This document shows, piece after piece, positions 15,701 to 54,983 of a DNA stretch of 64,000 bases (position 1 is its first letter; each line of letters opens with the position of its first letter). Position numbers and translations under genes: made by a program. Origin of the DNA: Amoeboaphelidium protococcarum X5. Taxonomy: Eukaryota; Fungi; Aphelidiomycota. The DNA lies in NCBI GenBank assembly GCA_023515725.1, contig JALDTO010000206.1, positions 1-64,000 on the forward strand. Direction: 5' to 3'. Below the pieces are notes generated by a model. It made no database searches. It was not told where the DNA came from and saw only the letters and a list, made by a program, of their open reading frames with translations.

Positions 15701-18700
15701 TGCTTTTACCAGCCTCCAACATTGGCTATACTTTCTACATGGCTACTGGAGAGATTTAAGCTGGTGTTGGAGAAAACTCTGGAGACACTGCATAATTCAC
15801 TAAACCATCCACAGAGTCAACAAGTGGAACAGCTGAGGCTTCACACTTGGCTCTATTGGCATCAGACTGAGATGAAGCAAGCAATTTGATATTCTAAACA
15901 AGCGCAGCAGTCTAGGTAGCAATGTTCTTTGAGTATTGGATAAACTGAGCTTTAGCGGCAGGTGCAACTGCTGCGTTACTCTGAATGTTCTTACAGTTAG
16001 CACATAGAGCAGCGGTACACTTGGCAATTGCACTGGCAGCTGCGAGAATATCTTACTGCTTGCTATTAGGATTGATTAACAGGGACAAAGCATTCTTTAT
16101 CTCTGTAGTATTGGAAGTGAATTGACTAGCATCAAAAGCACCGGGCTTTCCAGGAACACTAGACGGGTCGGCAGTGGCTACCAAGTAGGCTGCGCGTACT
16201 TATTTTGACGCCATACTGTCAACTGCCTATGCAATTGTAAGCAAAGCCTAACCAAGCTTGACAGCATCTCCCGACCGTAAGGCAGCGCTTGCAGTTGATA
16301 CTTGCGCGCCAACTACCTTATAAGTGTCTGCAACAGAGTTGACACACTGGTAATAATTCTCACTACGCTGGACAACAGATGGGTCACTTAAGTAATCCAG
16401 ACGTCCTAAAGCCTACAACAGTAATTTGTCAGCCTAATTACACTCTGGAATACCTGGAGCAGTGGCAGTGCAAGTATCTAGCAGCTTGCTAATAGAGTCG
16501 GCCATCAACTTGGCAGCCTCTGCTAACTGACCACGCTAGTTGCTATCCATTTGAGAATGTTTAGAAGCCTAGAGAGTACTGTAACTAGTATTCGCCAGCT
16601 CATTAAAAAGACTTTGTACATTAGCCTGTGCTTAAGGATCATTGGTCGTGGCAATCAAAGCTTTACTTGCGAGAACAACTCTGTTGAAAGCATCCTCAAA
16701 TTAGTTTGCACTGCCCTTCAAATCAGCAACATTTCCATTACGGCTAGCATTCACAAGAGAGTTACATGCAAGAGCCAGAGCTGCAGCAGCAGAATTGAGC
16801 TTATTCTGCGCACTTTGAAAAGTCTCTCCCGCCTCTTTTACAGGAGGGCCATTGGCAAACAAGTCAACAGAAGCAGCAATTAAATTCAATGCATGATCAA
16901 TGTCTCTCTGTCCAGGGAGAGCACTGTTCACGGTGGCTATAATCTCGGTAGCATGCTGATAACCTTCAGCAATAGCTCGATTACACTCTGCAATCTCTTA
17001 TGGGGATTTATTAATATTCTTATCGAAAATCAACTTTGCATTCTTGAGCATTTTTTCCAAGTCCCCGGCTAATTCTGCAGCTGCTTCAAATAAACCTCTC
17101 TGTACATCAGGGTCACCAATGGACAAAGCTGCAAGAGTCTTGATGTAAGATGCCCAACTCTGGAACGCGCTAGTAGTATCAAGAACAGCAGAGCCACACG
17201 CAGACTCATTGTTCTAATTGGCAGAATTAACTAAGGTTAATAAACCAGGATTTATGATCTTCAATGCATCCAATATACCGGTTGCCGCCGTCTCTTAAGA
17301 CTAACCAAGCGGTGCGCGCAGTTGTCCTTTAGCAAGTTTTTCCTATCCATTCATGATGTCCTCCAGAGCAGCTTTAATAGCCTTCATACCAGTCACATAT
17401 TCTGATCCACTGATTGCAGCTTCAGCAAGAGCAATAGCGTTAGTCAGATTCTCCAAATCAGTCTCATGCTATTTGATGGCTCCAGATAGAGACTATTATG
17501 CAGATATGTCACCCGTCGTAGAAGCGACAGACTTGGCAGCAACGACAAAATTAGAGGCAATTCCCACCACACCTTTGGCGGATTAAATCAATTTACTTTG
17601 CAGACCAGTATCATCCACAGCTTTAAGGTGAGCCTTGGTAGCATAAATCAGATCAGACACATTATCTGCAGTCTGCTTACCGACTGTATTCAACTGAATC
17701 TGTGACGCTTGATTTCTGTTAGAAGGTCCAGCTTTCTTAGCGGCACCGATGAGCTAAGTGACAGAACCAGCGAACCTCTTGGATGCCTCGGCAAGGGTTC
17801 CCAAAGCTTTTTTCTTGGCGTTATCGCCAGATGCAGCAAGGAGAGCTTTTTCGACATCAGCAACAGCAAGTTTTAACAATCTCTATTTCTCCTGATCATT
17901 CGGATTCTTTGCAGCATCTTTGGCAGCTTAAATCATTCTGGTAGTAGCCTCTGCCAGACGCTTAGCAGCCTAAATCATACTGTCTTTATCGTCGGCAAAA
18001 GCTGGATCTTGACCTCTAGCCTTAAGCAAATTAACCAAACCAGTAGTGGCCAAAGTCAAATTCTTTGCGGCATCAATGATATTTCCGGAGTTTCCATTAG
18101 TTGATGATAGCTGGTTAATAGCCCCTGTAGCTTTATCAAAAATAGCATCAAACTCAGGATCAGTCCCCTCTGCCCCTTCCAATAACTTGAAATTCTTGGC
18201 CTTCTCAATCAAATTGGCAATAGCCTCATTCACTTTCTAGGAGTGCTTCATAAGCTCAACATTAGCTCTAGAATTATATCCAATCTTGGCCTTAAAAGGC
18301 TCCACCACAGAATGCAAATCATTGACAGCATCTTTAACAATCAAAGTGCCTTCCCACAACTAATCTTGACACTATGGAAACTAGATAGAAGGTGCCACAA
18401 CCATTGTGCAAGTGACCAAAGACTCTGCGGCAATACCAGCCTGTTTAGAAAAGTACACGATTTCAGGTTGCAATTATTAAAATTGAGGATCATTCAGAGC
18501 CTCCTAGGCAATAGGCTTACTACCTTGACTGACCAATGCAATCGTCGCCTTTGCAACTTCTTTAGCGGCATCAACCAACTACTATTAGACAAACTGTGAA
18601 ACTTCTGCTTCACCAATTTTACTCAAAAGATTGAATGCCTATTTGGAGATTTCCTAACCTTGACGCAACACCTCAGCCCGGACACTTGGATCTCCATCAC

Positions 18701-43797: not shown

Positions 43798-44040
43798 GAG
43801 GTTTTAAAGATGACTTTATAAGATTTCATCCAAGATTGGCCGCGTCAAGTTCAAACAGCTACTAGAACACAAATTTGAATAGTTTTGGCACCATGTGTGA
43901 TCTAAATAACTACAACTGAAAACATCACGTCCGCTCAATTATTGCATTAACGAATCATCTAACATGCATTCATCATTATAATCATCACTCAGTAAAGTCA
44001 CTCAATGGCAAATCTATACGCAATTACCCAGCGGGAAATC

Positions 44041-46980
44041 TCATGCATCATGGACGTGGAAGCAGTTGGCACAACTATGCTCTTTGAAGGGATTGCGAGC
44101 AAAAGCTGTACAATTACAGTACTAGCACTTGCTCTTATTCTCCACCCGCTTGGTCTCCTTCTTCACATCATACTTGGAGATTTTCACGCCTGGTATTTTC
44201 TCCAACTCTCGCTTTGTCAATGGCACCAGTGGCTAATGAATCTGAGAGTTCTTCTGATGAAAGGCATTCAAATTCACAGGTGCCTGACTATTGTCAATTG
44301 GATCCTTCTACTTGTAGCCAATAATCTCAACTAGGGACGCTTACTCTGGTTTAGCACCAACCACAGGCTTTACTGGTATTTACGGCACACTATGCTATGA
44401 TAACACGGCTGGTTTCTAGAATGCCATAGCTGGATTATCAACAACAGGCTTATATGGCCCCTCAGCATACATGTCCGTATTCTTTGTATTATAAGAACCA
44501 GATTAAGGCGAGCTATATTACTGCTACTACTACTATTGTTATTACTATACAAACTGTTGCGCATACATCTACTGCTACTAGCCACCATACACGGGTCTCT
44601 ATTAAAACTGCTACTGAGTCTAGTACTTGAGAGGCTACTATTGTAATTAAGGAGACAACTATTACTAAGGCACGTGTCCAGTCATCTACTGGCGAAGAGA
44701 CATCTAGCCAGGTTGTTATTACAAAGCCATGTTGCCATAATCATTAAGAGCACTACCGGAGACGGCCTTCTTGATCACATTAGAATGCTGCTATTAGTCA
44801 TTGAATGAAGCAGCATACGGATTAACATGATGCGAAGATGAAGAGCTTCTCGCAGACTAAGATGGAGTCTGTTGTTGTTGTTGTTATTGAGAAGAGTCCA
44901 CACTCTCCAAGTACAGTTTGCGACTCTTGGCACTGCGAATACTGAGTACCCAATCTTTCATTTTATCCAGGGAATCCACACACAGATAGTAGCAATACTA
45001 AAACGGGTTCTCATAAACGGCTGCATTCTCTTAGGACTTCATTGCAAAGCAAAACTTGGTGGGTGCCTTCTTCTTGACTCGCATAAGAGTATACACATCA
45101 TAGACGTCCAGGTGGCAAAGCAGAGTCTCCTCACTGCCCCTGGAGTCTTTCGCGTAGTAGAGACCATCATTCTTCAGCTCCAGATAACGCTTCTACCACT
45201 TATCCTTCTTCAGTTCAACGTATGCCCAACCACACATCTTTGGATAAGATTTCTTGGCTCCTCTCGCGGTCAGTGAATCTTTGTACCTATACTTCTTGAG
45301 GAGAAGACTATTTGGAGACTCTTTTCCCCAAGTGGTCATAACGTCGGTAACAATCTCAAAATCTCTCAATGGCCTCTCCAGTCCATACTCGTTGATAATC
45401 TCAAATAGCGTCCACTCGGAAGTATCTTCAAGCAAACTGCGCTCTTTCAGATCCCTCACGATATGCTTCGCACTCTAAAGCGAAGTGATCACCAGAGTCT
45501 TGAAAGTTTACGCGTTCTCAATGTAGATACGGGCAGTAATTTTCTTCACTTTAGCCTTGGTCAACTTCATCATGGCATTTTTAACTTTATCTTCGTGTCT
45601 CTATTAATTTAAATTCTCTCGAGATCTCTACGGCTGATACACTAAATGCTCCTCAGCAGGACTCTCATAATTTCCAGGTGCACTTAACTGTGGCTTTAAA
45701 GGCATCTTTGTACTAGCATTCATTCTATTGAAACTAGTAGCACGCTACAACTAATCACTTTACGGCTGATCACTAATGTAATCAGCCTCTAGATACTCAG
45801 TTTCTGATGATTACGGAACTTCCTATTACAACTTACTTTGACCAATTTTACGACCTTTCTTATGATCAAAAATCTAATCTAAATCTCCCAATAAAGAGTC
45901 CAAATTCTAGAAATCACTAAGAGATACTTCTTCAAATTTCAAAGCGACCGACATTCTCTTGCTCTATTCTTTAAGCTGACGCTCCTCTTCCAAGTCATCA
46001 TCAGTGCCTGGGCCATTGGACAGATCAACTTCCTCAGGTCCCTCTAAACTGGACTGTGAGTTTACAGAATTTATGGATGGCTGTGATTACGACTTGGTCA
46101 TCCCTTTAAGTGGTTTAGGCTGTAATTGCGGGAGCTTGTCATAATACTGATCCACCTGCTTATCTGCTAACATCTCTTTAGATTTACTAGACTTCATGTT
46201 ATTGTTAATCTTCTAATACAGCATCTACCTAGGATCTGCACCATCGCTATCATACTTGAGTTACTACAAACTCTTACTCTTGGGCTAAATATTTTAAGCA
46301 TCTCCATTTTCTGACCTTGAATACTGCTACCCGGGCTACGATTACTACTACTACTAATGCCGCTATGACATAGACATAGGATTGAGAGAATCGACACTCA
46401 AGTTCTAAGCTTTCGAGATTGGAGGTGGAGGAACAGGTGCTACATCGAACATTATTGTGGCAGAGGCGTCCTGCTCCGGCTTAAAATTTCTAACTGTCTG
46501 TGGCGGTGGTCGCTTCAATGGTTACACTCCAGCGAAAGAAGACTGACCACCTCCATTCACCACATAATTAGGAGTACTAAGATTAGGTTAACTCTTATTA
46601 GGCTTATTTAGAGAAACAGGAGGAGGTGATGCCTACTGCTACTATTAATTCTTATTCTAATGCTGATGATGATTATTGCCACCATTTGGAGTCTTCATAT
46701 TCTTATTACCAGGACCATTGCTGACAGCAGCATTACTCTGAGGTAAAGGAGGACTCGTCATGTTTCCATACATTCCAATGATATTGTTCGTCTCCGGACT
46801 CTCTGGTGAAGGCGTAAGCTACATGTAGTGATAATTTATAAAATAATTAATATGATGTTTATCATAAATTTAATATTGCTAGATGCTTACAGTATTGTAT
46901 TTGGATGACATTTTCTGCAACTTATTCAACATGTCATCCAGCTCATTGAGAGCCGAATTCTAATTCCCGTTATTACTCAT
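44041..46980 (-). CDS. MRL-family-like (RIAM/lamellipodin/MIG-10) coiled coil-RA-PH adaptor, ~955 aa; intron 46819-46890
   Basis: HEDKVKNAMMKLTKAKVKKITARIYIEN, then RA (WTLFEIINEYGLERPLRDFE) and PH (GWAYVELKKDKWQKRYLEL...APTKFCFAMK...KDWVLSIRSAK). LD-like motifs and Pro/Gln-rich linkers are present. Confidence 0.85.
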
Positions 46981-47204
46981 TCCAAGTATACGTTCTATCT
47001 TGAAAGTATGGACAATTTGAGATGGGTAGTCTAAACAAAATAGAGCCAAATAAGTAAGAAATATTGTGATGGATGAGTTGATATGATAGACTGAAAGTAA
47101 GTAAATAGGAAGAGAGAATTGAAACAATCGATGAGCGGCAAGATTTTAAAAATAGCCCATTTCTGTAGGCGTGATATTACTTTCGACAATTTTATACTCA
47201 AAAC

Positions 47205-48299
47205 TCATGTGGCTTTCTTGGCATAATTAATAAAGCCAATGCCTACGCAGCTCATCAGGATCGTATCTGAGGATTTATCACGCACAATTTTGAACTGGAC
47301 GCCGGTAAGTTCCTTGAGGTCGCGCAGGAAAGCAATAGTGAACTTTGTTAGTTCCGATCCAACTCTAATCTTACTAACATCTTCAGGACCGAACGCCATA
47401 AGCAAAAGATTAAGCCACTAACTTTTAGAGTCTACACATCCACCTCGAGATATCTCATTGTACAACAGTTTCGCAGCCCGCAGACCAACATTTTCGGGAG
47501 TCTAGCCGGCCAGTGCCATATTCTCTGCGCAGGTAAGTGCACCACTAGTAGACTCTGCCACAAGAGATAGACCATATCCGGCAGACTTTCCAGACTCTAC
47601 TCCTTTATACACGTCCGAGTAAATGTAAACGTCCGGGATGAATTTGTTCAACAGTACACGCGACGATTCAACCATTCGATTGGAGTTTTGTGGTGATACT
47701 CTAGCGGCATAAGCTACTCCTCTTATCTTTCTAATTCTGCCTTCATCAGTGAACTGAATAGATTTAAGAGTGCGCGTATTAGCACATTTAAACTGGACAT
47801 GTCCACCACCGTTTGGACGCGCGCCACGTCTCTTTATCTACAACTCAATGGTACCCTCAAGGCCATATCGCGTGAGTTGAGGCAATAGAACAGTCCTGAT
47901 AAGATCTACGGTAATGCATTATTCATCATTTGTGATACCATAAAATTAAATGTTGATAGGATTCTTGGTAAACGGCGCCAGTGCTAACATAGGCTCCAAA
48001 TAGTAACCAATCGACTTGTCCAATTCACAATCAAATTCCAATCTGCCACCCATAAGAGCACCCGGCTTATAACTGATGCTAGTACCAGTGTAACTAATAT
48101 CAAATACAGATCCATTGGTGAGAGCCTCCAACAGTTTCATAAATCGAATCTCTGCCGCATATAGGCCGACTTGACCAGTAGAATCTCCATCAGGCCTGAT
48201 GTCCTCTATCACGACGCTGTTGCCCGTCAGAGTCGCCAACACCAGTCGATATCTAAACAGTTCATGTCCACTCAATTTCACCACACTACGCGTCACCAT
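47205..48299 (-). CDS. RCL1: RNA 3'-terminal phosphate cyclase-like protein Rcl1, 364 aa
   Basis: FRYRLVLATLTG, LEALTNGSVFDISYTGT, SIGYYLEP, RGARPNGGG and MSCVGIGFINYAKKAT-TGA. Confidence 0.94.
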
Positions 48300-48424: not shown

Positions 48425-48943
48425 TCACCTCCTGGTGTCATTTTTAAAATTTTTATCCTTTACATAGTCATAATCCCAGACTTTATCAGCTGGTGTATCA
48501 GTTAAAATACGTCTCTACATTGGTATGTACTATCCCTTTTCTTTAATCATGGCGCGTTTAAACAGTTCTGGTGCGCATCTCTCCAACTCTAAGCACGCAG
48601 CCTTCATCATTTCATGTTACTTTTGAATTTAATAGCTCTTTTATTCATAGATAACACGTTGGTATTCCTTAAAAACTTTCTCTGCTTATTCATTTAATAA
48701 AGGCTAACTTTAGCCATCTGCAGAAATACTACTCTAAACATTCGAATTAGGATTATCCTGGACACCATATCGAGGGAACACGACATCCTGTAAAGATTCC
48801 GAAGTAGAAGAGCTGATCACATTCTTCTTTGATTTATCATCCCTTCCACTCTTTACAGTCTTAAATCTGTTGAAGCATAAAATACTTATATCAGATTATT
48901 TAACTGCCTGGGAGTTTATCTTTGAAATCAATAAACGCGTCAT
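48425..48943 (-). CDS. Mitochondrial ribosomal protein mL40-like, 172 aa (absent from ORF track)
   Basis: C-terminal QHEMMKAACLELERCAPELFKRAM...IPMQRRILTDTPADKVWDYDY matches the fungal mL40 (MrpL28) pattern. N-terminus is presequence-like. Confidence 0.75.
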
Positions 48944-49213: not shown

Positions 49214-51906
49214 ATGATTAGAAATATGAGTGGTAGATTTGCATTTCTGTCACGTCTTTTGATCAGTTAGAGAAGATTATACAGTTCAACGGTATGACTA
49301 ATATGGTAGTTTTTAGTATCTCCTATATCATTATATAGTTGATGTAGGAATTGTAAAAGGCTACTGTACCTGAGCTTTATCCTAATATGCTTCTGGTGCC
49401 CATCACTATGAAACCTCTGTTCCCGTAAATGACAAAGAGTGTCTAGATATCTGATCCGGCGGTTAAGCTGAGTATTAATCGGCTAATGAAGTCCAATTAG
49501 CCGTATATTGGATGTTTCCTCACTAAAGATGACGACTTTCCGGATGATGTCATTAGGTCAAAGGATCAGGTCCACTCTATGGGAACGTTTACCTAAATAT
49601 TGAGGACAGAGAAGATGTAGAATGGAGATTTAAATTTAATTGTTCTACCTCAGCGACGGGTCAGAATTACCGAATCACTATATCCATCGCCTGGTGGAAG
49701 GGGAAGCATAACTGATTCTACATCGGCGCCCGCTGGTGCAGCTAGTCATTAAATGTCTGGCGAAGAGGGATTAAAGCAGTAGTAGTTATCATCATATGAT
49801 GTTATGCAAGATGAGGCTGTTAGTCGTGTGGTTGTCAGCAATGTCTATGATGAGCCATACAGCAAGAATCCTCTTATTAAGGCTCTCACTACCGAGATTT
49901 TGTCTTGCATCAAAGATTTGATTCGTTTTAATCCTCAGGTACGCGAATAGGTGACAATGTTGAGTTTATCCAGCAGGACAAGTATTATGGATGATCCTGC
50001 TCTGCTAGCCGACTTTTCGGCATCCATCAGTCAGTTTGCCGGTGCTGAAGAACTACAGTAAGTATTAGAGTCAATGGTGATAGAGGAACGTTTGTAAAAG
50101 GTTTTAGTTATCCTGAAGAAGGAACTGTCCAATGCCAAGCTATAAGAACAGATTGATCGCGAAGTTGAGGAGAAAATGAACAAGGCTAGGAAGGAGTATT
50201 ATTTGATGGAGCACATGAAGGGGATATAGAAGGAGCTGGGTATAGACAGCGATGGTAAAGATAAACTTGTGCTAAAGTTCAAAGACTTGCGATCCAAGTT
50301 ATAAATGCCAGAAGAAGTGTCGCTGGTATTTGATGAAGAGCTGAACAAGTTTATGAATTTAGATTCCAGCTCAATGGAATTTAATGTCAGTCGCAACTAT
50401 TTGGACTGGCTTACTTCTCTCCCGTGGGGTAAATAGTCTGTGGATAGCCTCGACATTGAGCGTACCCGATAGATTTTGGATCATGATCACTATGGAATGA
50501 AGGATGTGAAGGAGCGTATTTTGGAGTTTGTCGCGGTGAGTAAATTGAACAGTAAAGCGGCTTAAGGTAAGATTCTGTGTTTGTCTGGTCCGCCAGGAGT
50601 TGGTAAGACTTCTATTGGTAAAAGTATTGCCAAGGCGCTGAATAGAGAATTCTATAGATTCAGCGTCGGTGGTCTGGGTGATGTCAGTGAAATTAAAGGC
50701 CATAGGCGAACGTACGTTGGCGCATTGCCTGGCAAGATTGTTCAAGCTCTAAAGAAGGTATAGACTGAGAATCCTTTGATTCTTATAGATGAGGTGGATA
50801 AGATTGGTCGGAGTAGTTTCCGTGGTGACCCTTCGAGTGCCTTATTGGAAGTTCTGGATCCTGAGTAGAATTCCTCGTTTATGGATCATTATCTTGACGT
50901 TCCGCTTGACTTGTCCAAGGCTCTTTTTATGTGTACCGCTAACGTTTTGGATACTATTCCAGGACCGCTTTTAGACAGAATGGAAGTTATCGAACTGTCT
51001 GGATACGTGACTGAAGAAAAGGTTGCCATTGCGAATTAATATTTGATGGACAGTGCTCGCAAAAATGCAGGATTAACCAAAGATCAAGTCGAGGTGACTC
51101 CAGAAAGCTTGGTGCGCTTAATCAATGAATATTGTCGAGAGAGTGGTGTCCGTAATTTAAAAAAGTAGATTGAAAAGATTTATAGAAAAGCCGCATTTAA
51201 AGTTGTGCAGAAGTAGGAAGAGAATGATTCGGATGCCAGCAAGGGCCATGCATTAGTTGTCACTGATTAGAATTTACCCGATTTCGTTGGTGTTCCCATT
51301 TACAGTCAGGAAATGATGTATGATAGTCCACCGGCTGGTGTTGTCAGAGGTCTTGCTTGGACTGGTCAAGGTGGGGCAACTTTGTACGTTGAATGCATCA
51401 GCAAAGATCTGCATAACAAGACTGGACGCGCCAGCATTGTGCCCACTGGTCAGCTGGGAGATGTCATGAAAGAGTCCACAGACATTGCTTACACTTACGC
51501 TTAGTAATATCTCCGCCACTTACAGCCTGAAAGTAACTTCTTCCAGTAGAACTCTATCCATCTACATGTTCCTCATGGAGCCATTAAGAAAGATGGCCCT
51601 AGTGCTGGCGTGACAATGTGCACTGCATTGCTTTCGCTGGCATTGAATCAGCCGGTTCCAGCAGACGTTGCAATGACTGGAGAGCTTACACTGAGTGGGA
51701 AAGTGTTGAGGATTGGCGGAGTTAAAGAGAAGATTATCGCAGCTAAAAGATCTGGTGCCAGAAGGATAATGTTCCCCAAGGCCAATGAAGGTGATTATGA
51801 AGATCTTGAAGATTTCATCAAAGATGGCATTGAGGCCCACTTTGTATCCAGTTTCGATGAGTTGGCCCGGATTGTTTTCAGTACTTCCAACACCTCAAGT
51901 CATTGA
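49214..51906 (+). CDS. PIM1: Mitochondrial Lon protease, ~878 aa; intron 49292-49347
   Basis: Presequence-like exon 1, Walker [41 protein letters not shown] (Q=TAG), catalytic KDGPSAG and IGGVKEK. No PTS1. Confidence 0.95.
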
Positions 51907-53075: not shown

Positions 53076-54983
53076 ATGGGCTACTGGTACGACTTTATTT
53101 TTGGTCCTAAAGTTCCTCATAGTCAGTGGGGTCGGTAGATTAACAGCTTCCTGTTTGGTAATAAGAATGTCTAACGAGCCTTGTTCTAGTGGGAGATGCT
53201 GTACTACACCAATGTGTACCCAAAGTATTAAAATTTTCTCAACTTGCCGCCAGTTCATTACGTCAGTAGAAGCTTTATTCAACCTCTTTAGAATTAGTGT
53301 CATCGATTTTGGAATACTTTTGAGTATGACGTCAAGAGCATTGTGTTCTATACCGTGTTGTTGTATGCAGTGTTCAAGTTTCTGAAATGGGCTCGTTCTC
53401 GTACTCTGTGCCAACACTGGAAGGCTCTAAAGACTACCTGCATCCATACAGTGTTCAATTTGCTCAAGCTGATTCCGTCGGTGCGGCGTACAATATAATT
53501 AGAGCTGGGCAAGGTGCTGGATGATGTCGAGGACAAGTTGTTTAAAGTGGAGAGCACGCATAAGATCAAACCCCTGGCCAAGCTGCCTGCAAAGTCCATG
53601 TCCAATGAGTAGATTCAGGATATCTTGAAGCGACACAAGGAGTTGGAGCATGTAGACTGGCGCGGTGGAAAGGTGTCAGGCACGGTGTATCATGGTGGGA
53701 AGGAGTTGTCAGAGCTGCTTGTGGAGACTTATTCCATGTTCTCTCATTCTAATCCACTTCATCCTGACGTGTTTCCAAGTACAAGACTGATGGAGGCTGA
53801 GGTTGTCTCTATGCTTTTGAACATGTTTAATGCTCCTATGAAGCTCGGAGGTGATAAGAAGGGCGAGGACTCTACGGGTGGAAGTCCTTGTGGTAATATT
53901 ACTAGTGGTGGTACCGAGAGTATCTTGATGAGTGTGAAAGCGCATAGGGATTGGGCTTTTCATACAAAGGGCATCACTGAGCCTGAGATTGTCATTCCAA
54001 TTACCGCTCACGCTGCTTTCGATAAGGCTGCGGCTTACTTCAAGGTGAAGGTGACCCACGTTGACATTGATAAGAACAATGGGTGGAGAGTGGACATGAA
54101 GAAGATGCGCCGTGCTATCACAAGCAATACCATCATGATTGTCGGTAGTGCGCCAAATTATCCTCATGGAATATTCGATGATATCGAGTAGTTGGGCAAG
54201 TTGGCGCAGAGTTTCAATATTGGTTTGCATGTTGACTGCTGCCTAGGATCATTTATTGTTCCCTTCTTGGCCAAGGCTGGATTCGGTGAAGGTATTAGGC
54301 CGTTTGATTTCCGTGTACCTGGTGTGACTTCGATCTCTTGTGATACTCATAAGTTTGGATTTGCACCTAAGGGATCGTCTGTTATCATGTACAGAAGTGC
54401 TGAGGTGAGAAAGTATTAATATTTTGTATTTCCAGAATGGTCTGGTGGCATCTATGCTTCTCCGTCGATTGCTGGTAGTAGAAGTGGTGCTCTGGTTGCC
54501 TCTTGTTACGCAGCACTTCTGCACATGGGGGAGAGTGGATACATTGAGAGCACCAAGAAGATCGTCACTGCGGCTAGAGCTATTAAAGAAGGCGTGAAAT
54601 CCATCGAGGGTATTGAAGTATGTGGAGACCCGTTGGCTATGGTTATTGCATTCACCAGTCAAAAATACAATATTTACTCTATTGGTGATACTATGACTGC
54701 TAAAGGGTGGAATCTTAACACTTTGCAACATCCGGCTGCCATCCATATTTGCTGCACTTTACCTACTGTTAATTCTTATGGCTAATTCATTGCTGATTTG
54801 AAGGATGCTGTGGAGTAGGTGAGAATTAAAACGCTGAAGGCGATAGCTCATGGCGATGTAAAACAGAATCAAGAGGAAGGTAATGCTGCAATATACGGTA
54901 TGGCTGCAAGTATCCCAGATAAGAGGCTAGTTGGAGACATTGCTGCCGGTTATTTGGACGCATTAACGAAATTGAGACACTGA
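53076..54983 (+). CDS. DPL1: Sphingosine-1-phosphate lyase, 635 aa
   Basis: [44 protein letters not shown]-lysine motif [15 protein letters not shown] and [10 protein letters not shown]. Confidence 0.95.

What the first reader, a model, noticed from the sequence alone, without database searches (positions are those of the whole stretch)
44041..46980. RIAM/lamellipodin-like adaptor with LD motifs: candidate partner of the talin in the same window
Seen: N-terminal NELDDMLNKL, internal NLDSLLGDL (45880-45903; canonical LDxLLxxL), then HEDKVKNAMMKLTKAKVKKITARIYI directly before tandem RA-PH domains, with Pro-rich linkers. Established: animal MRL proteins have the pre-RA coil ADKIKLALEKLKEAKVKKLVVKV, and RIAM uses an N-terminal LD-like helix to bind the talin rod downstream of Rap1. 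Inference: a Rap/Ras-MRL-talin module, usually regarded as animal integrin-activation machinery, exists in this fungal-side amoeboid lineage. Its position ~23 kb from talin may be coincidence.
Basis: partly seen in the sequence, partly recalled or inferred. Interest (0 to 1): 0.8.

Follow-up and report, generated by a model that had tools for sequence, protein, structure and literature searches.

The report
RIAM-like adaptor in a fungal relative
This alga-parasitising relative of fungi, and most early-branching fungi, carry an unnamed gene built like the animal adaptors RIAM and lamellipodin, which link the Rap1 switch to talin, so this part of the cell-adhesion machinery probably predates animals; binding to talin is not yet shown.

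Summary
On the minus strand, 46980..44041 is one gene, read with TAA/TAG as glutamine. It has 83 in-frame TAA/TAG codons and no TGA. I add one 72-nt intron (46890..46819), which gives a 955-aa protein.

It contains a pre-RA coiled coil, an RA domain and a PH domain. In the PDB these match only RIAM, lamellipodin and Grb7/10/14. It has no SH2 or BPS domain.

It is not a lone oddity. It belongs to a single-copy family found across Holomycota (chytrids, Blastocladiomycota, Zoopagomycota, Mucoromycota, Glomeromycota and Dikarya). Every named member is annotated "hypothetical".

Both LD motifs are conserved in the non-Dikarya lineages. The N-terminal motif aligns profile-to-profile with the animal talin-binding helix TBS1 (P = 3.6e-5). 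The internal motif aligns with the animal TBS2/autoinhibitory block (P = 0.004). Both motifs are missing in Dikarya, which the literature says have lost talin.

The genome also encodes Rap1, talin, vinculin and a likely Ena/VASP. The talin R8 domain keeps its LD-recognition Ile-Lys. No integrin beta was found.

What departs from the animal family: no EVH1-ligand motifs, and a lineage-specific C-terminal zinc knuckle.

Talin binding remains inferred. The 23-kb linkage to talin looks coincidental. The scan also noted the twin copy of this gene on other DNA (contig C155).

The parts
44041..46980 (-). Whole gene from ATG 46980 to TGA 44043-44041. It is read with TAA/TAG = Gln and gives 955 aa after splicing.
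   Evidence: The frame holds 83 TAA/TAG codons and no TGA. dN/dS against the twin copy on contig C155 is 0.105 at dS 0.27. Transcript-like contigs of run X6 cover only 44034..47081.
46891..46980 (-). Exon 1 (30 codons), which holds the N-terminal LD/TBS1-like helix.
   Evidence: The in-frame upstream ATG at 47160 lies outside the transcript-like contig.
46819..46890 (-). 72-nt phase-0 intron (GTAAGC...TAG), AT-rich. It contains no TGA, so it reads as open frame.
   Evidence: Run X6 contig record 23 skips 46819..46890. The splice-site sequence is visible. This segment has no counterpart in orthologues.
46918..46947 (-). N-terminal LD motif NELDDMLNKL (residues 12-21). It is the candidate equivalent of the animal talin-binding helix TBS1.
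   Evidence: An LD-like motif sits in the first 30-35 residues of 25 of 99 full-length relatives, against 2% of other 30-residue windows (P = 2e-20). hhalign places the fungal N-terminal profile on animal TBS1 with P = 3.6e-5 and probability 71%. A helix is predicted in orthologue P0009.
46417..46440 (-). Conserved poly-proline motif APVPPPPI.
   Evidence: It aligns with AP(x)PPPP motifs in P0010, P0003, P0004 and P0009. It is not a canonical EVH1 ligand.
45868..45939 (-). Internal acidic LD block (KFEEV..DFQNLDSLLGDLDQIF). It resembles the TBS2/autoinhibitory (IN) segment of animal MRL proteins.
   Evidence: The block is conserved in 28 relatives about 100 residues before the coil. dN/dS here is 0.027. 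hhalign against the animal TBS2 block gives P = 0.004. It is ordered in the AF2 model of P0009 (pLDDT 74-79), and the autoinhibited RIAM structure 6E31 aligns across it.
45541..45597 (-). Coiled-coil helix just before the RA domain.
   Evidence: This piece alone hits only RIAM in the whole PDB, and the match falls exactly on RIAM's pre-RA helix (E = 0.18). The family profile aligns to RIAM and Lpd starting from the coil. A helix at residues 2-19 is predicted in the model of the orthologue P0010.
45283..45546 (-). RA (Ras-association) domain. Glu-Arg sit at the positions of RIAM Glu212-Lys213.
   Evidence: The role of the RIAM residues is taken from PMC9250098.
44923..45246 (-). PH domain with a basic beta1-beta2 loop (KKDKWQKRY).
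44128..44922 (-). Gln-rich, low-complexity tail. A conserved PLVPLTKxxL block lies near its end.
   Evidence: dN/dS is 0.15 for residues 701-890.
44050..44127 (-). C-terminal Cys/His zinc knuckle (CxxCxC...CxxCxHxH).
   Evidence: All nine Cys/Gly/Asn/His positions are invariant in 8 chytrid-type and aphelid-type relatives. It resembles an A20-type zinc finger only weakly (E = 0.011). dN/dS is 0.027.
15759..16052 (-). Part of the neighbouring talin gene: R8 helices alpha2-alpha3 with the LD-recognition Ile-Lys at 15890..15885. This is the proposed docking site, not part of the adaptor gene.
   Evidence: These pieces hit the talin-1 R7R8 structure 4W8P at 5e-4 and 3.8e-6, and I1543/K1544 are conserved. 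The role of these residues is taken from PMC4938799.

Best explanation
The gene encodes the counterpart, on the fungal side of the opisthokonts (Holomycota), of the animal MRL adaptors (MIG-10/RIAM/lamellipodin).

Shown:
- It is a real gene under purifying selection, read with TAA/TAG as Gln and carrying one small intron.
- Its domain order is N-terminal amphipathic LD helix, acidic LD block, coiled coil, RA, PH, disordered tail.
- Its coil-RA-PH module is homologous to, and in orthologues folds like, the integrated cc-RA-PH unit of RIAM and lamellipodin.
- It is one member of a vertically inherited family found across fungi.

Inferred mechanism:
- GTP-bound Rap1 and acidic phosphoinositides recruit the RA-PH unit to the plasma membrane. 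This genome has a geranylgeranyl-type Rap1 with Lys31 and Asp33. The RA helix alpha1 keeps Glu-Arg at the positions of RIAM Glu212-Lys213. The PH loop is basic.
- The N-terminal helix then brings talin to the membrane by docking on an LD-binding rod bundle such as R8, whose Ile-Lys recognition box is conserved in the talin of this window.
- The internal LD block probably folds back on the RA domain as an autoinhibitory segment like RIAM's IN segment. It may also act as a second talin site.
- The tail lacks EVH1 ligands. Its terminal zinc knuckle is a lineage-specific addition of unknown role.
For: Gene reality:
- Codon statistics, and dN/dS of 0.105 with 21 exchanges between TAA/TAG and CAA/CAG against the twin copy.
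- Transcript-like coverage with a spliced intron in run X6.

Homology of the core:
- The RA piece hits only Grb14, RIAM, Grb10, Lpd and Grb7 in the PDB.
- The coil piece hits only RIAM.
- The family profile gives RIAM 9e-35, Lpd 3e-31, Grb14 7e-29, and the next hit is at 3e-6.
- The AF2 model of orthologue P0010 has pLDDT 91.8. Its top 12 Foldseek hits are Lpd/RIAM cc-RA-PH at 2e-17 with TM 0.75.
- Orthologues contain only RA and PH, with no SH2 or BPS.

Family:
- 218 relatives were found, and the named ones come from chytrids, Blastocladiomycota, Kickxellomycotina, Entomophthoromycotina, Mucoromycotina, Glomeromycota, Mortierellomycotina and Dikarya.
- The tree largely follows fungal phylogeny.
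- The gene is at a single locus in this genome, present as two twin copies.

Motifs:
- The N-terminal motif is enriched at protein N-termini (P = 2e-20) and aligns to animal TBS1 (P = 3.6e-5).
- The internal block is conserved and aligns to animal TBS2.
- Neither motif is detected as conserved in the 24 Dikarya rows: the internal block is absent from all 24, and only 2 have any LD-like match upstream, neither aligned. The literature says talin, vinculin and paxillin are absent from Dikarya (PMC5042518).

Partners in this genome:
- Rap1, talin, a conserved talin R8 LD box, vinculin, and a WH1 domain with a VASP_tetra-like stretch 1.4 kb downstream.

Autoinhibition hint:
-, read together with PMC8813058.
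Against:
- The motif similarities are short. The aphelid's own N-terminal piece finds nothing in the PDB. HMMs built from the animal motifs score the fungal motifs weakly.
- RA-PH alone scores Grb14 as high as MRL proteins.
- The protein lacks FPPPP-type EVH1 ligands, and its tail is Gln-rich rather than Pro-rich.
- One of the three RIAM phosphoinositide-binding residues (Lys331) is Gln here.
- The family persists in Dikarya without talin, so its core job does not need talin.
- The absence of the motifs in Dikarya is a single evolutionary event, not a statistical correlation.
- No integrin beta was found, so the downstream target differs from that in animals.
- No RNA run of this organism itself is on record.
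Confidence: 0.6

Rival explanations
1. The protein is a Ras/Rap-regulated RA-PH membrane adaptor that has nothing to do with talin. Its LD helices serve only intramolecular autoinhibition (like the IN segment of RIAM), or bind another helical-bundle protein such as vinculin, or act as nuclear-export-like signals.
For: - The internal block is ordered next to the RA-PH unit in the AF2 model, and the autoinhibited RIAM structure 6E31 aligns across it.
- The family survives in Dikarya, which lack talin.
- Vinculin is present in this genome.
- The motif-level similarity to TBS1 and TBS2 is short.
Against: - The N-terminal motif aligns specifically with the animal talin-binding helix TBS1, at the same N-terminal position.
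- Both motifs are undetected in exactly the clade that lost talin.
- The LD-recognition box of talin R8 is conserved in this genome.
Confidence: 0.3
2. The protein is a Grb7/10/14-type adaptor, that is, a receptor-coupled RA-PH adaptor rather than an MRL protein.
For: - The single best PDB hit of the RA piece is Grb14 (4e-7).
Against: - No SH2 or BPS domain is present in any of 8 orthologues, nor in the pieces of this gene.
- The pre-RA coil matches only RIAM.
- The profile and Foldseek searches both rank RIAM and Lpd first.
- N-terminal TBS1-like and TBS2-like motifs are present.
Confidence: 0.03
3. The stretch is not a functional gene. It would be a pseudogene riddled with stops, or a chance open frame.
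For: Under the standard code the frame holds 83 stop codons.
Against: - All the stops are TAA or TAG, and none is TGA.
- They exchange with CAA/CAG in the twin copy, and dN/dS is 0.03 in the domains.
- The same reassignment is seen in Rap1, vinculin and talin.
- A related strain yields transcript-like contigs with the intron removed.
Confidence: 0.01

Closest known systems
RIAM (APBB1IP), the Rap1-GTP-interacting adaptor of vertebrates
   Same: - The order of parts matches the one given for RIAM in PMC8813058: N-terminal talin-binding-type helix, acidic IN/TBS2-like block, coiled coil, then an integrated RA-PH unit.
- Glu-Arg sit at the positions of Glu212-Lys213 on RA helix alpha1.
- The PH beta1-beta2 loop is basic.
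   Different: - There are no (D/E)FPPPP EVH1 ligands or XPPPPP profilin motifs apart from one poly-Pro run.
- The tail is Gln-rich rather than Pro-rich.
- The spacer between the two helices is much longer (about 320 residues, against about 40).
- It carries a C-terminal zinc knuckle.
- Lys331 is replaced by Gln.
- No integrin beta was found in this genome for it to act on.
Lamellipodin (RAPH1), MIG-10 and the cnidarian MRL proteins
   Same: - Cnidarian MRLs carry DIDKMLDELQ (TBS1) and EVDLDALLEDLC (TBS2). These are the closest matches to the fungal and aphelid motifs ELDDMLNKLQ and NLDSLLGDLD.
- The lamellipodin cc-RA-PH structure 4GMV is the top fold match.
   Different: Sequence identity over RA-PH is about 23-27%. 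The same differences in the tail apply as for RIAM.
Grb7/Grb10/Grb14 adaptors
   Same: They share the integrated RA-PH unit. Sequence and fold scores are nearly as high as for MRL proteins.
   Different: There is no BPS region and no SH2 domain. By my own knowledge Grb proteins lack the conserved pre-RA coil and the N-terminal talin-binding helices. That could not be tested here, because no full-length Grb sequence could be fetched.
Uncharacterised fungal 'PH domain-containing' or hypothetical proteins (for example in Phlyctochytrium, Gaertneriomyces, Rhizophagus, Cunninghamella, Allomyces, Kickxella and Suillus)
   Same: These are direct orthologues, 40-60% identical over RA-PH. They share the coil, the LD motifs (outside Dikarya), and in chytrids the zinc knuckle.
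   Different: The aphelid copy is written in the TAA/TAG = Gln code and has a Gln-rich tail. Dikarya members lack the conserved motifs, mostly lack the coil, and (the Basidiomycota ones) end in a ..FEPGSLLAK motif.

Membership tests
MRL (MIG-10/RIAM/lamellipodin) adaptors | Tandem RA and PH domains that form one structural unit | tested here: met
   - Pfam RA/RA_2 and PH matches.
- The family profile hits RIAM and Lpd RA-PH at 1e-31 to 1e-35.
- The orthologue model has pLDDT 91.8 and TM 0.75 to 4GMV, 3TCA and 4KVG.
- The fold was tested on orthologues P0010 and P0009, not on the window protein itself, because its in-frame TAA/TAG codons bar it from the structure tool.
MRL (MIG-10/RIAM/lamellipodin) adaptors | Conserved coiled-coil segment of about 27 residues directly N-terminal to the RA domain (PMC9250098) | tested here: met
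   - The coil piece hits only RIAM among 177,635 PDB sequences, and the match falls on its pre-RA helix (E = 0.18).
- The profile alignment to RIAM and Lpd starts in the coil.
- The helix is predicted in the orthologue models.
MRL (MIG-10/RIAM/lamellipodin) adaptors | N-terminal amphipathic talin-binding helix (TBS1) | tested here: inconclusive
   - At the sequence level, hhalign places the fungal N-terminal profile on animal TBS1 (P = 3.6e-5, probability 71%).
- The motif is strongly enriched at protein N-termini.
- Binding to talin was not tested.
- The aphelid piece alone finds no PDB match.
MRL (MIG-10/RIAM/lamellipodin) adaptors | Second N-terminal block (TBS2, the autoinhibitory IN segment) between TBS1 and the coil | tested here: inconclusive
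   - The LD block is conserved.
- hhalign against the animal block gives P = 0.004.
- The block is ordered in the AF2 model, and 6E31 aligns over it at rmsd 6.2.
MRL (MIG-10/RIAM/lamellipodin) adaptors | Proline-rich regions carrying EVH1 (FPPPP-type) and profilin ligands (PMC4589889, PMC9250098) | tested here: not met
   - There is no [FLWY]PxxP-type motif.
- There are only three short poly-Pro runs in the N-terminal half.
- The tail is 19% Gln and 8% Pro.
- [FLWY]PPPP is found in only 2 of 92 relatives.
MRL (MIG-10/RIAM/lamellipodin) adaptors | Binds Rap1/Ras-GTP through RA helix alpha1 (RIAM Lys213 and Glu212) | tested here: inconclusive
   - Glu-Arg occupy these two positions in the aphelid protein.
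- Lys or Arg occupies the Lys213 position in 58 of 111 family members.
- The genome's own Rap1 has Lys31 and Asp33.
- There are no binding data.
Grb7/Grb10/Grb14 adaptors | C-terminal SH2 domain and a BPS region after the PH domain | tested here: not met
   Pfam scans of the pieces of this gene and of 8 full-length orthologues find only RA/RA_2 and PH.
LD-motif talin ligands (RIAM TBS1, DLC1, paxillin LD) | An LDxLLxxL-type amphipathic helix, together with a talin R8 that has the Ile1543/Lys1544 recognition box | tested here: met
   - Canonical LDSLLGDL lies at 45903..45880, and ELDDMLNKL near the N-terminus.
- Talin R8 pieces align to 4W8P with Ile-Lys conserved (PMC4938799).
- Only the sequence prerequisites are met. 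Binding itself cannot be tested with these tools.

The most novel reading that the evidence does not exclude
A Rap1-MRL-talin 'inside-out' recruitment module already existed in the common ancestor of animals and fungi. It still operates in aphelids and early-branching fungi without integrins. There it would feed talin to other NPxY-tailed receptors; earlier notes of this scan report Sib-like ones on this same contig, which I did not test. Its talin-binding helices were lost, together with talin, on the line leading to Dikarya. Under this reading RIAM is not a late animal add-on to an older direct Rap1-talin route, as the review PMC9250098 suggests as one possibility.
Probability: 0.4. Interest if true: 0.8.

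Novelty: new variant of a known kind. Interest (0 to 1): 0.66.

Why it matters
MRL proteins are described from animals only (human, fly and worm members in PMC9250098). One review suggests RIAM may have evolved after a direct Rap1-talin link. I found no paper in the searchable library that reports an MRL-type protein outside animals.

Early-branching fungi are known to keep talin, vinculin and paxillin while lacking integrins, FAK and Src. What these proteins do there is an open question (PMC5042518).

A conserved Rap1 effector with talin-binding-type helices gives that question a concrete upstream handle. It can be tested in transformable chytrids. It also names a large family of fungal proteins that are currently annotated as hypothetical.

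Tried and rejected
1. **Word-index protein search with a full-length fungal alignment.** It was swamped by low-complexity candidates and returned only 7 hits.
2. **The same search with a cnidarian MRL.** It returned only close cnidarian and mollusc MRLs. The tree has only animal MRLs as outgroup, so it cannot test placement relative to Grb proteins.
3. **The N-terminal piece against the PDB.** It gave only chance hits such as tropomyosin.
4. **Short HMMs of animal TBS1 and TBS2 against the fungal set.** Only two fungal N-termini (P0113, P0013) beat the decoys. Reversed-sequence decoys proved unsuitable, because LD motifs read almost the same backwards. I replaced this with profile-profile alignment.
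5. **An apparent RA paralogue at C207/C98.** It is a MyTH4-FERM myosin, not an RA-PH protein.
6. **Conserved linkage to talin.** The positional orthologue P0010 keeps the RTC-MRL adjacency. No talin gene lies within 10 kb on either side, and the downstream genes differ. I treat the linkage as coincidence.
7. **Paxillin and integrin beta Pfam models.** Neither finds anything in this genome. The tool itself warns that these blanks do not prove absence.
8. **RNA evidence from this organism.** No RNA run is on record. Only contigs of a related strain look like transcripts.
9. **Limits imposed by the tools.** The window protein, whether read through its TAA/TAG codons or spliced, could not be handed to the search or fold tools. 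All such calls used pieces between stops, given by reference, or used the orthologues P0010 and P0009. The code-6 translation was used only inside my own scripts. The joined two-exon sequence was used only for local residue counting and was never searched or folded.
Full report
**1. The gene**

Under the bacterial code the region 44041..46980 has no long ORF. On the minus strand, however, one frame runs from ATG 46980 to TGA 44043-44041 with 55 TAG and 28 TAA codons and no TGA. The other two frames hold 35 and 42 TGA codons. Read with TAA/TAG as glutamine, this gives one continuous protein.

The genome is 23.6 Mb in 346 contigs, and the window is contig C205. A twin copy lies on contig C155. 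It is 93% identical in protein, with dS 0.27 and overall dN/dS 0.105. Between the two copies there are 21 exchanges between TAA/TAG and CAA/CAG, which confirms the code.

Selection is strongest on three parts:
- the internal LD block (dN/dS 0.027);
- coil-RA-PH (0.033);
- the C-terminus (0.027).

Contigs of a public run from a related strain (X6, about 93% identical) cover only 44034..47081 and leave the flanking DNA uncovered, whereas the DNA runs cover the flanks. One X6 contig also skips 46819..46890. On the coding strand that 72-nt stretch begins GTAAGC, ends TAG and is AT-rich. It has no counterpart in orthologues. I therefore call it an intron.

The in-frame ATG at 47160 lies outside the transcript-like contig, so 46980 is the start. 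No RNA run of the organism itself is on record.

**2. The domains**

- Pieces between the reassigned codons match Pfam RA_2 (9e-10), RA (8e-7) and, weakly, PH.
- Read-through six-frame scans give the full RA domain at 40.3 bits and RA_2 at 49.3 bits.
- Against all PDB sequences, the RA piece hits only Grb14, RIAM, Grb10, lamellipodin and Grb7.
- The 30-residue pre-RA piece hits only RIAM, and the match falls exactly on RIAM's pre-RA helix.

**3. The family**

An exhaustive search with the RA piece found 218 relatives, 72 of them below 1e-10. I used this search because the word search cannot see full-length kin of a 93-residue piece.

The named relatives are 'hypothetical' or 'PH domain-containing' proteins from these groups:
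- Chytridiomycota: Phlyctochytrium, Gaertneriomyces, Rhizoclosmatium;
- Blastocladiomycota: Allomyces, Blastocladiella, Coelomomyces, Sorochytrium;
- Zoopagomycota: Kickxella, Basidiobolus;
- Mucoromycotina, Glomeromycota and Mortierellomycotina;
- Basidiomycota: Suillus, Pleurotus and others;
- Ascomycota: Podospora, Anthostomella.

A maximum-likelihood tree of 128 RA-PH segments recovers these groups largely as in the organismal phylogeny. The two aphelid copies sit with unnamed metagenomic sequences next to the chytrids.

One of those unnamed sequences, P0010, is a positional orthologue. Its contig keeps the Lon, MRP-L28, RTC and adaptor genes together, as in the window.

The genome has no second RA-PH gene. 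The next-best RA hits belong to a MyTH4-FERM myosin and to talin's own head.

**4. Relation to animal MRL and Grb proteins**

A profile of 56 fungal coil-RA-PH segments scores as follows against the PDB:
- RIAM 9e-35;
- lamellipodin 3e-31;
- Grb14 7e-29;
- Grb10 6e-21;
- the next protein, a generic PH domain, only 3e-6.

Constructs that include the coil score about 10 bits higher, and the alignment begins in the coil.

So RA-PH alone does not separate MRL from Grb. What points to MRL is the coil, the N-terminal motifs, and the absence of SH2 and BPS in all orthologues tested. I could not fetch Grb sequences, so the requested tree with Grb proteins is missing.

**5. The LD motifs**

The internal motif belongs to a conserved block of about 25 residues, with consensus ..FE..T..D[YF].D[LMI]D.LL..LD. 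The block lies about 100 residues before the coil in aphelid-type, chytrid, Kickxellomycotina and some Blastocladiomycota proteins.

The N-terminal motif (consensus M..[DE]LD.[IM]L..L[EQ]) lies within the first 30-35 residues of 25 of 99 full-length relatives. Only 2% of other 30-residue windows carry such a motif (binomial P = 2e-20). It is found in Mucoromycotina, Glomeromycota, Blastocladiomycota, Basidiobolus and the aphelid group.

Animal MRLs fetched here (fish lamellipodin, cnidarian and mollusc MRLs) carry DIDKMLDELQ-type TBS1 and EVDLDALLEDLC-type TBS2 motifs.

Profile-profile alignment gives two results:
- The fungal N-terminal motif lands on animal TBS1 (P = 3.6e-5, probability 71%).
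- The internal block lands on the TBS2 block, including the upstream +F....[ED] part (P = 0.004).

In the 24 Dikarya rows the internal block is absent from all. Only two rows carry any LD-like match upstream, and neither is aligned. The coil is mostly unalignable. PMC5042518 states that talin, vinculin and paxillin occur in basal fungal phyla but not in Dikarya. This fits a link to talin or vinculin, but it is one evolutionary event and not a statistical correlation.

In an AlphaFold model of orthologue P0009:
- the N-terminal motif is a helix (pLDDT about 65);
- the internal block is an ordered helix-strand-helix unit (pLDDT 74-79) within an otherwise disordered N-terminal half;
- the autoinhibited RIAM structure 6E31 aligns over it, with 242 residues aligned between model 166-500 and chain 44-428, at rmsd 6.2.

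RIAM's IN segment binds Lys213 of the RA domain through acidic residues (PMC8813058). The internal 'LD motif' may therefore be mainly autoinhibitory.

**6. Functional residues and partners**

- At the positions of RIAM Glu212 and Lys213, which contact Rap1 Lys31 and Asp33 (PMC9250098), the aphelid protein has Glu-Arg.
- The PH beta1-beta2 loop is basic. Two of RIAM's three lipid-binding residues are kept, and Lys331 is Gln.
- The genome encodes a Rap1 orthologue with the DTAG-TEQF signature, Lys31, Asp33 and a CLIL tail. It also encodes Ras and Ral.
- It encodes full-length vinculin in two copies and talin in this window (Talin_middle, 127.7 bits).
- A WH1 domain is followed 1.4 kb downstream by a weak VASP-tetramerisation match, in both twin copies.
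- No integrin beta or paxillin Pfam match was found, with the tool's caveat that these blanks do not prove absence.
- Talin R8 helices alpha2-alpha3 align to mouse talin R7R8 (4W8P) with Ile1543 and Lys1544 conserved. This is the LD-recognition box described in PMC4938799.
- The adaptor itself has no EVH1-ligand motif.

**7. The C-terminus**

The last 26 residues form a CxxCxC...CxxCxHxH knuckle. It is invariant in aphelid-type and chytrid relatives and resembles A20-type zinc fingers only faintly (E = 0.011). Basidiomycota relatives end instead in ..FEPGSLLAK. Animal MRLs have neither ending.

**8. Verdict**

It needs four changes:
- The family is pan-fungal and not peculiar to this lineage.
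- A feature that defines the animal family, Pro-rich Ena/VASP ligands, is absent.
- The internal motif may be autoinhibitory.
- The linkage to talin is probably chance.

Talin binding is inferred and not shown.

No search or fold was run on the read-through or spliced window protein. Only pieces given by reference, or orthologues, were used.

Earlier notes of this scan name the organism as Amoeboaphelidium protococcarum and report Sib-like NPxY receptors on this contig. I did not test either claim.

Noticed in passing
window 46819-46890 (minus strand): A 72-nt phase-0 intron contains no TGA, so in this TAA/TAG = Gln genome it reads as open frame. It would silently add 24 false residues to a naive translation. 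Short in-frame introns may be under-called across this genome.
   Followed up: partly
G000:C207:342986-348259 (L012, L013), with a twin at C98:934091-939349: A large myosin tail with an IQ region and two MyTH4-FERM-like units. Its F1 lobes gave the best RA_2 hits in the genome. It looks like a myosin VII/X/XV-type motor, as found in filopodia-making cells.
   Followed up: partly
G000:C57:~1539-2080 and C156:~54313-54850 (L051, L052): A Rap1 orthologue with an intron placed right after the DTAG codons. It carries the Rap hallmark Thr61 (TEQF) and a CLIL geranylgeranylation box. The two twin copies have identical protein sequence in the second exon.
   Followed up: partly
G000:C200:382286-384025, with a twin at C233:688574-690307 (L060, L063, L059, L064): A WH1/EVH1 domain is followed 1.4 kb downstream, on the same strand, by a weak VASP-tetramerisation match (22 bits, below the cut-off). 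This is a probable Ena/VASP gene, yet the MRL-like adaptor has no EVH1 ligand.
   Followed up: no
window 44050-44127, and the alignment A4 of relatives: The C-terminal knuckle has C, C, G, C, C, N, C, H and H invariant in 8 chytrid-type and aphelid-type relatives. Its only PDB resemblance is to zinc finger 4 of A20/TNFAIP3, a ubiquitin-binding finger, at E = 0.011.
   Followed up: partly
relatives P0097, P0101, P0109-P0111, P0115, P0116, P0119, P0128, P0130 and others: Basidiomycota members of the family end in a conserved ..FEPGSLLAK(R) motif. A similar GSLLAK motif sits near the C-terminus of some Mucoromycota and Glomeromycota-clade members (P0019, P0026, P0052, P0056). It is an undescribed C-terminal short motif.
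   Followed up: no
window 43800-47200, in runs X1, X5, X6 and X8: The source sample (X1) holds both the window allele and a variant about 93% identical to it. Another sample of the same organism label (X8), a second organism label (X6) and a 2013 biofilm metagenome (X5, a 3.6-kb contig) hold only sequences about 93% identical to the window. This suggests the assembly mixes two diverged genomes (hybrid or two subgenomes), and that relatives occur in the environment.
   Followed up: partly
window 47337-48275, 48449-48931 and 49447-51879: RNA 3'-terminal phosphate cyclase-like, MRP-L28 and Lon protease genes flank the adaptor. The same neighbourhood occurs on the contig of the unnamed relative P0010, which uses the standard code. 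That organism is therefore a fairly close relative with a different genetic code.
   Followed up: partly
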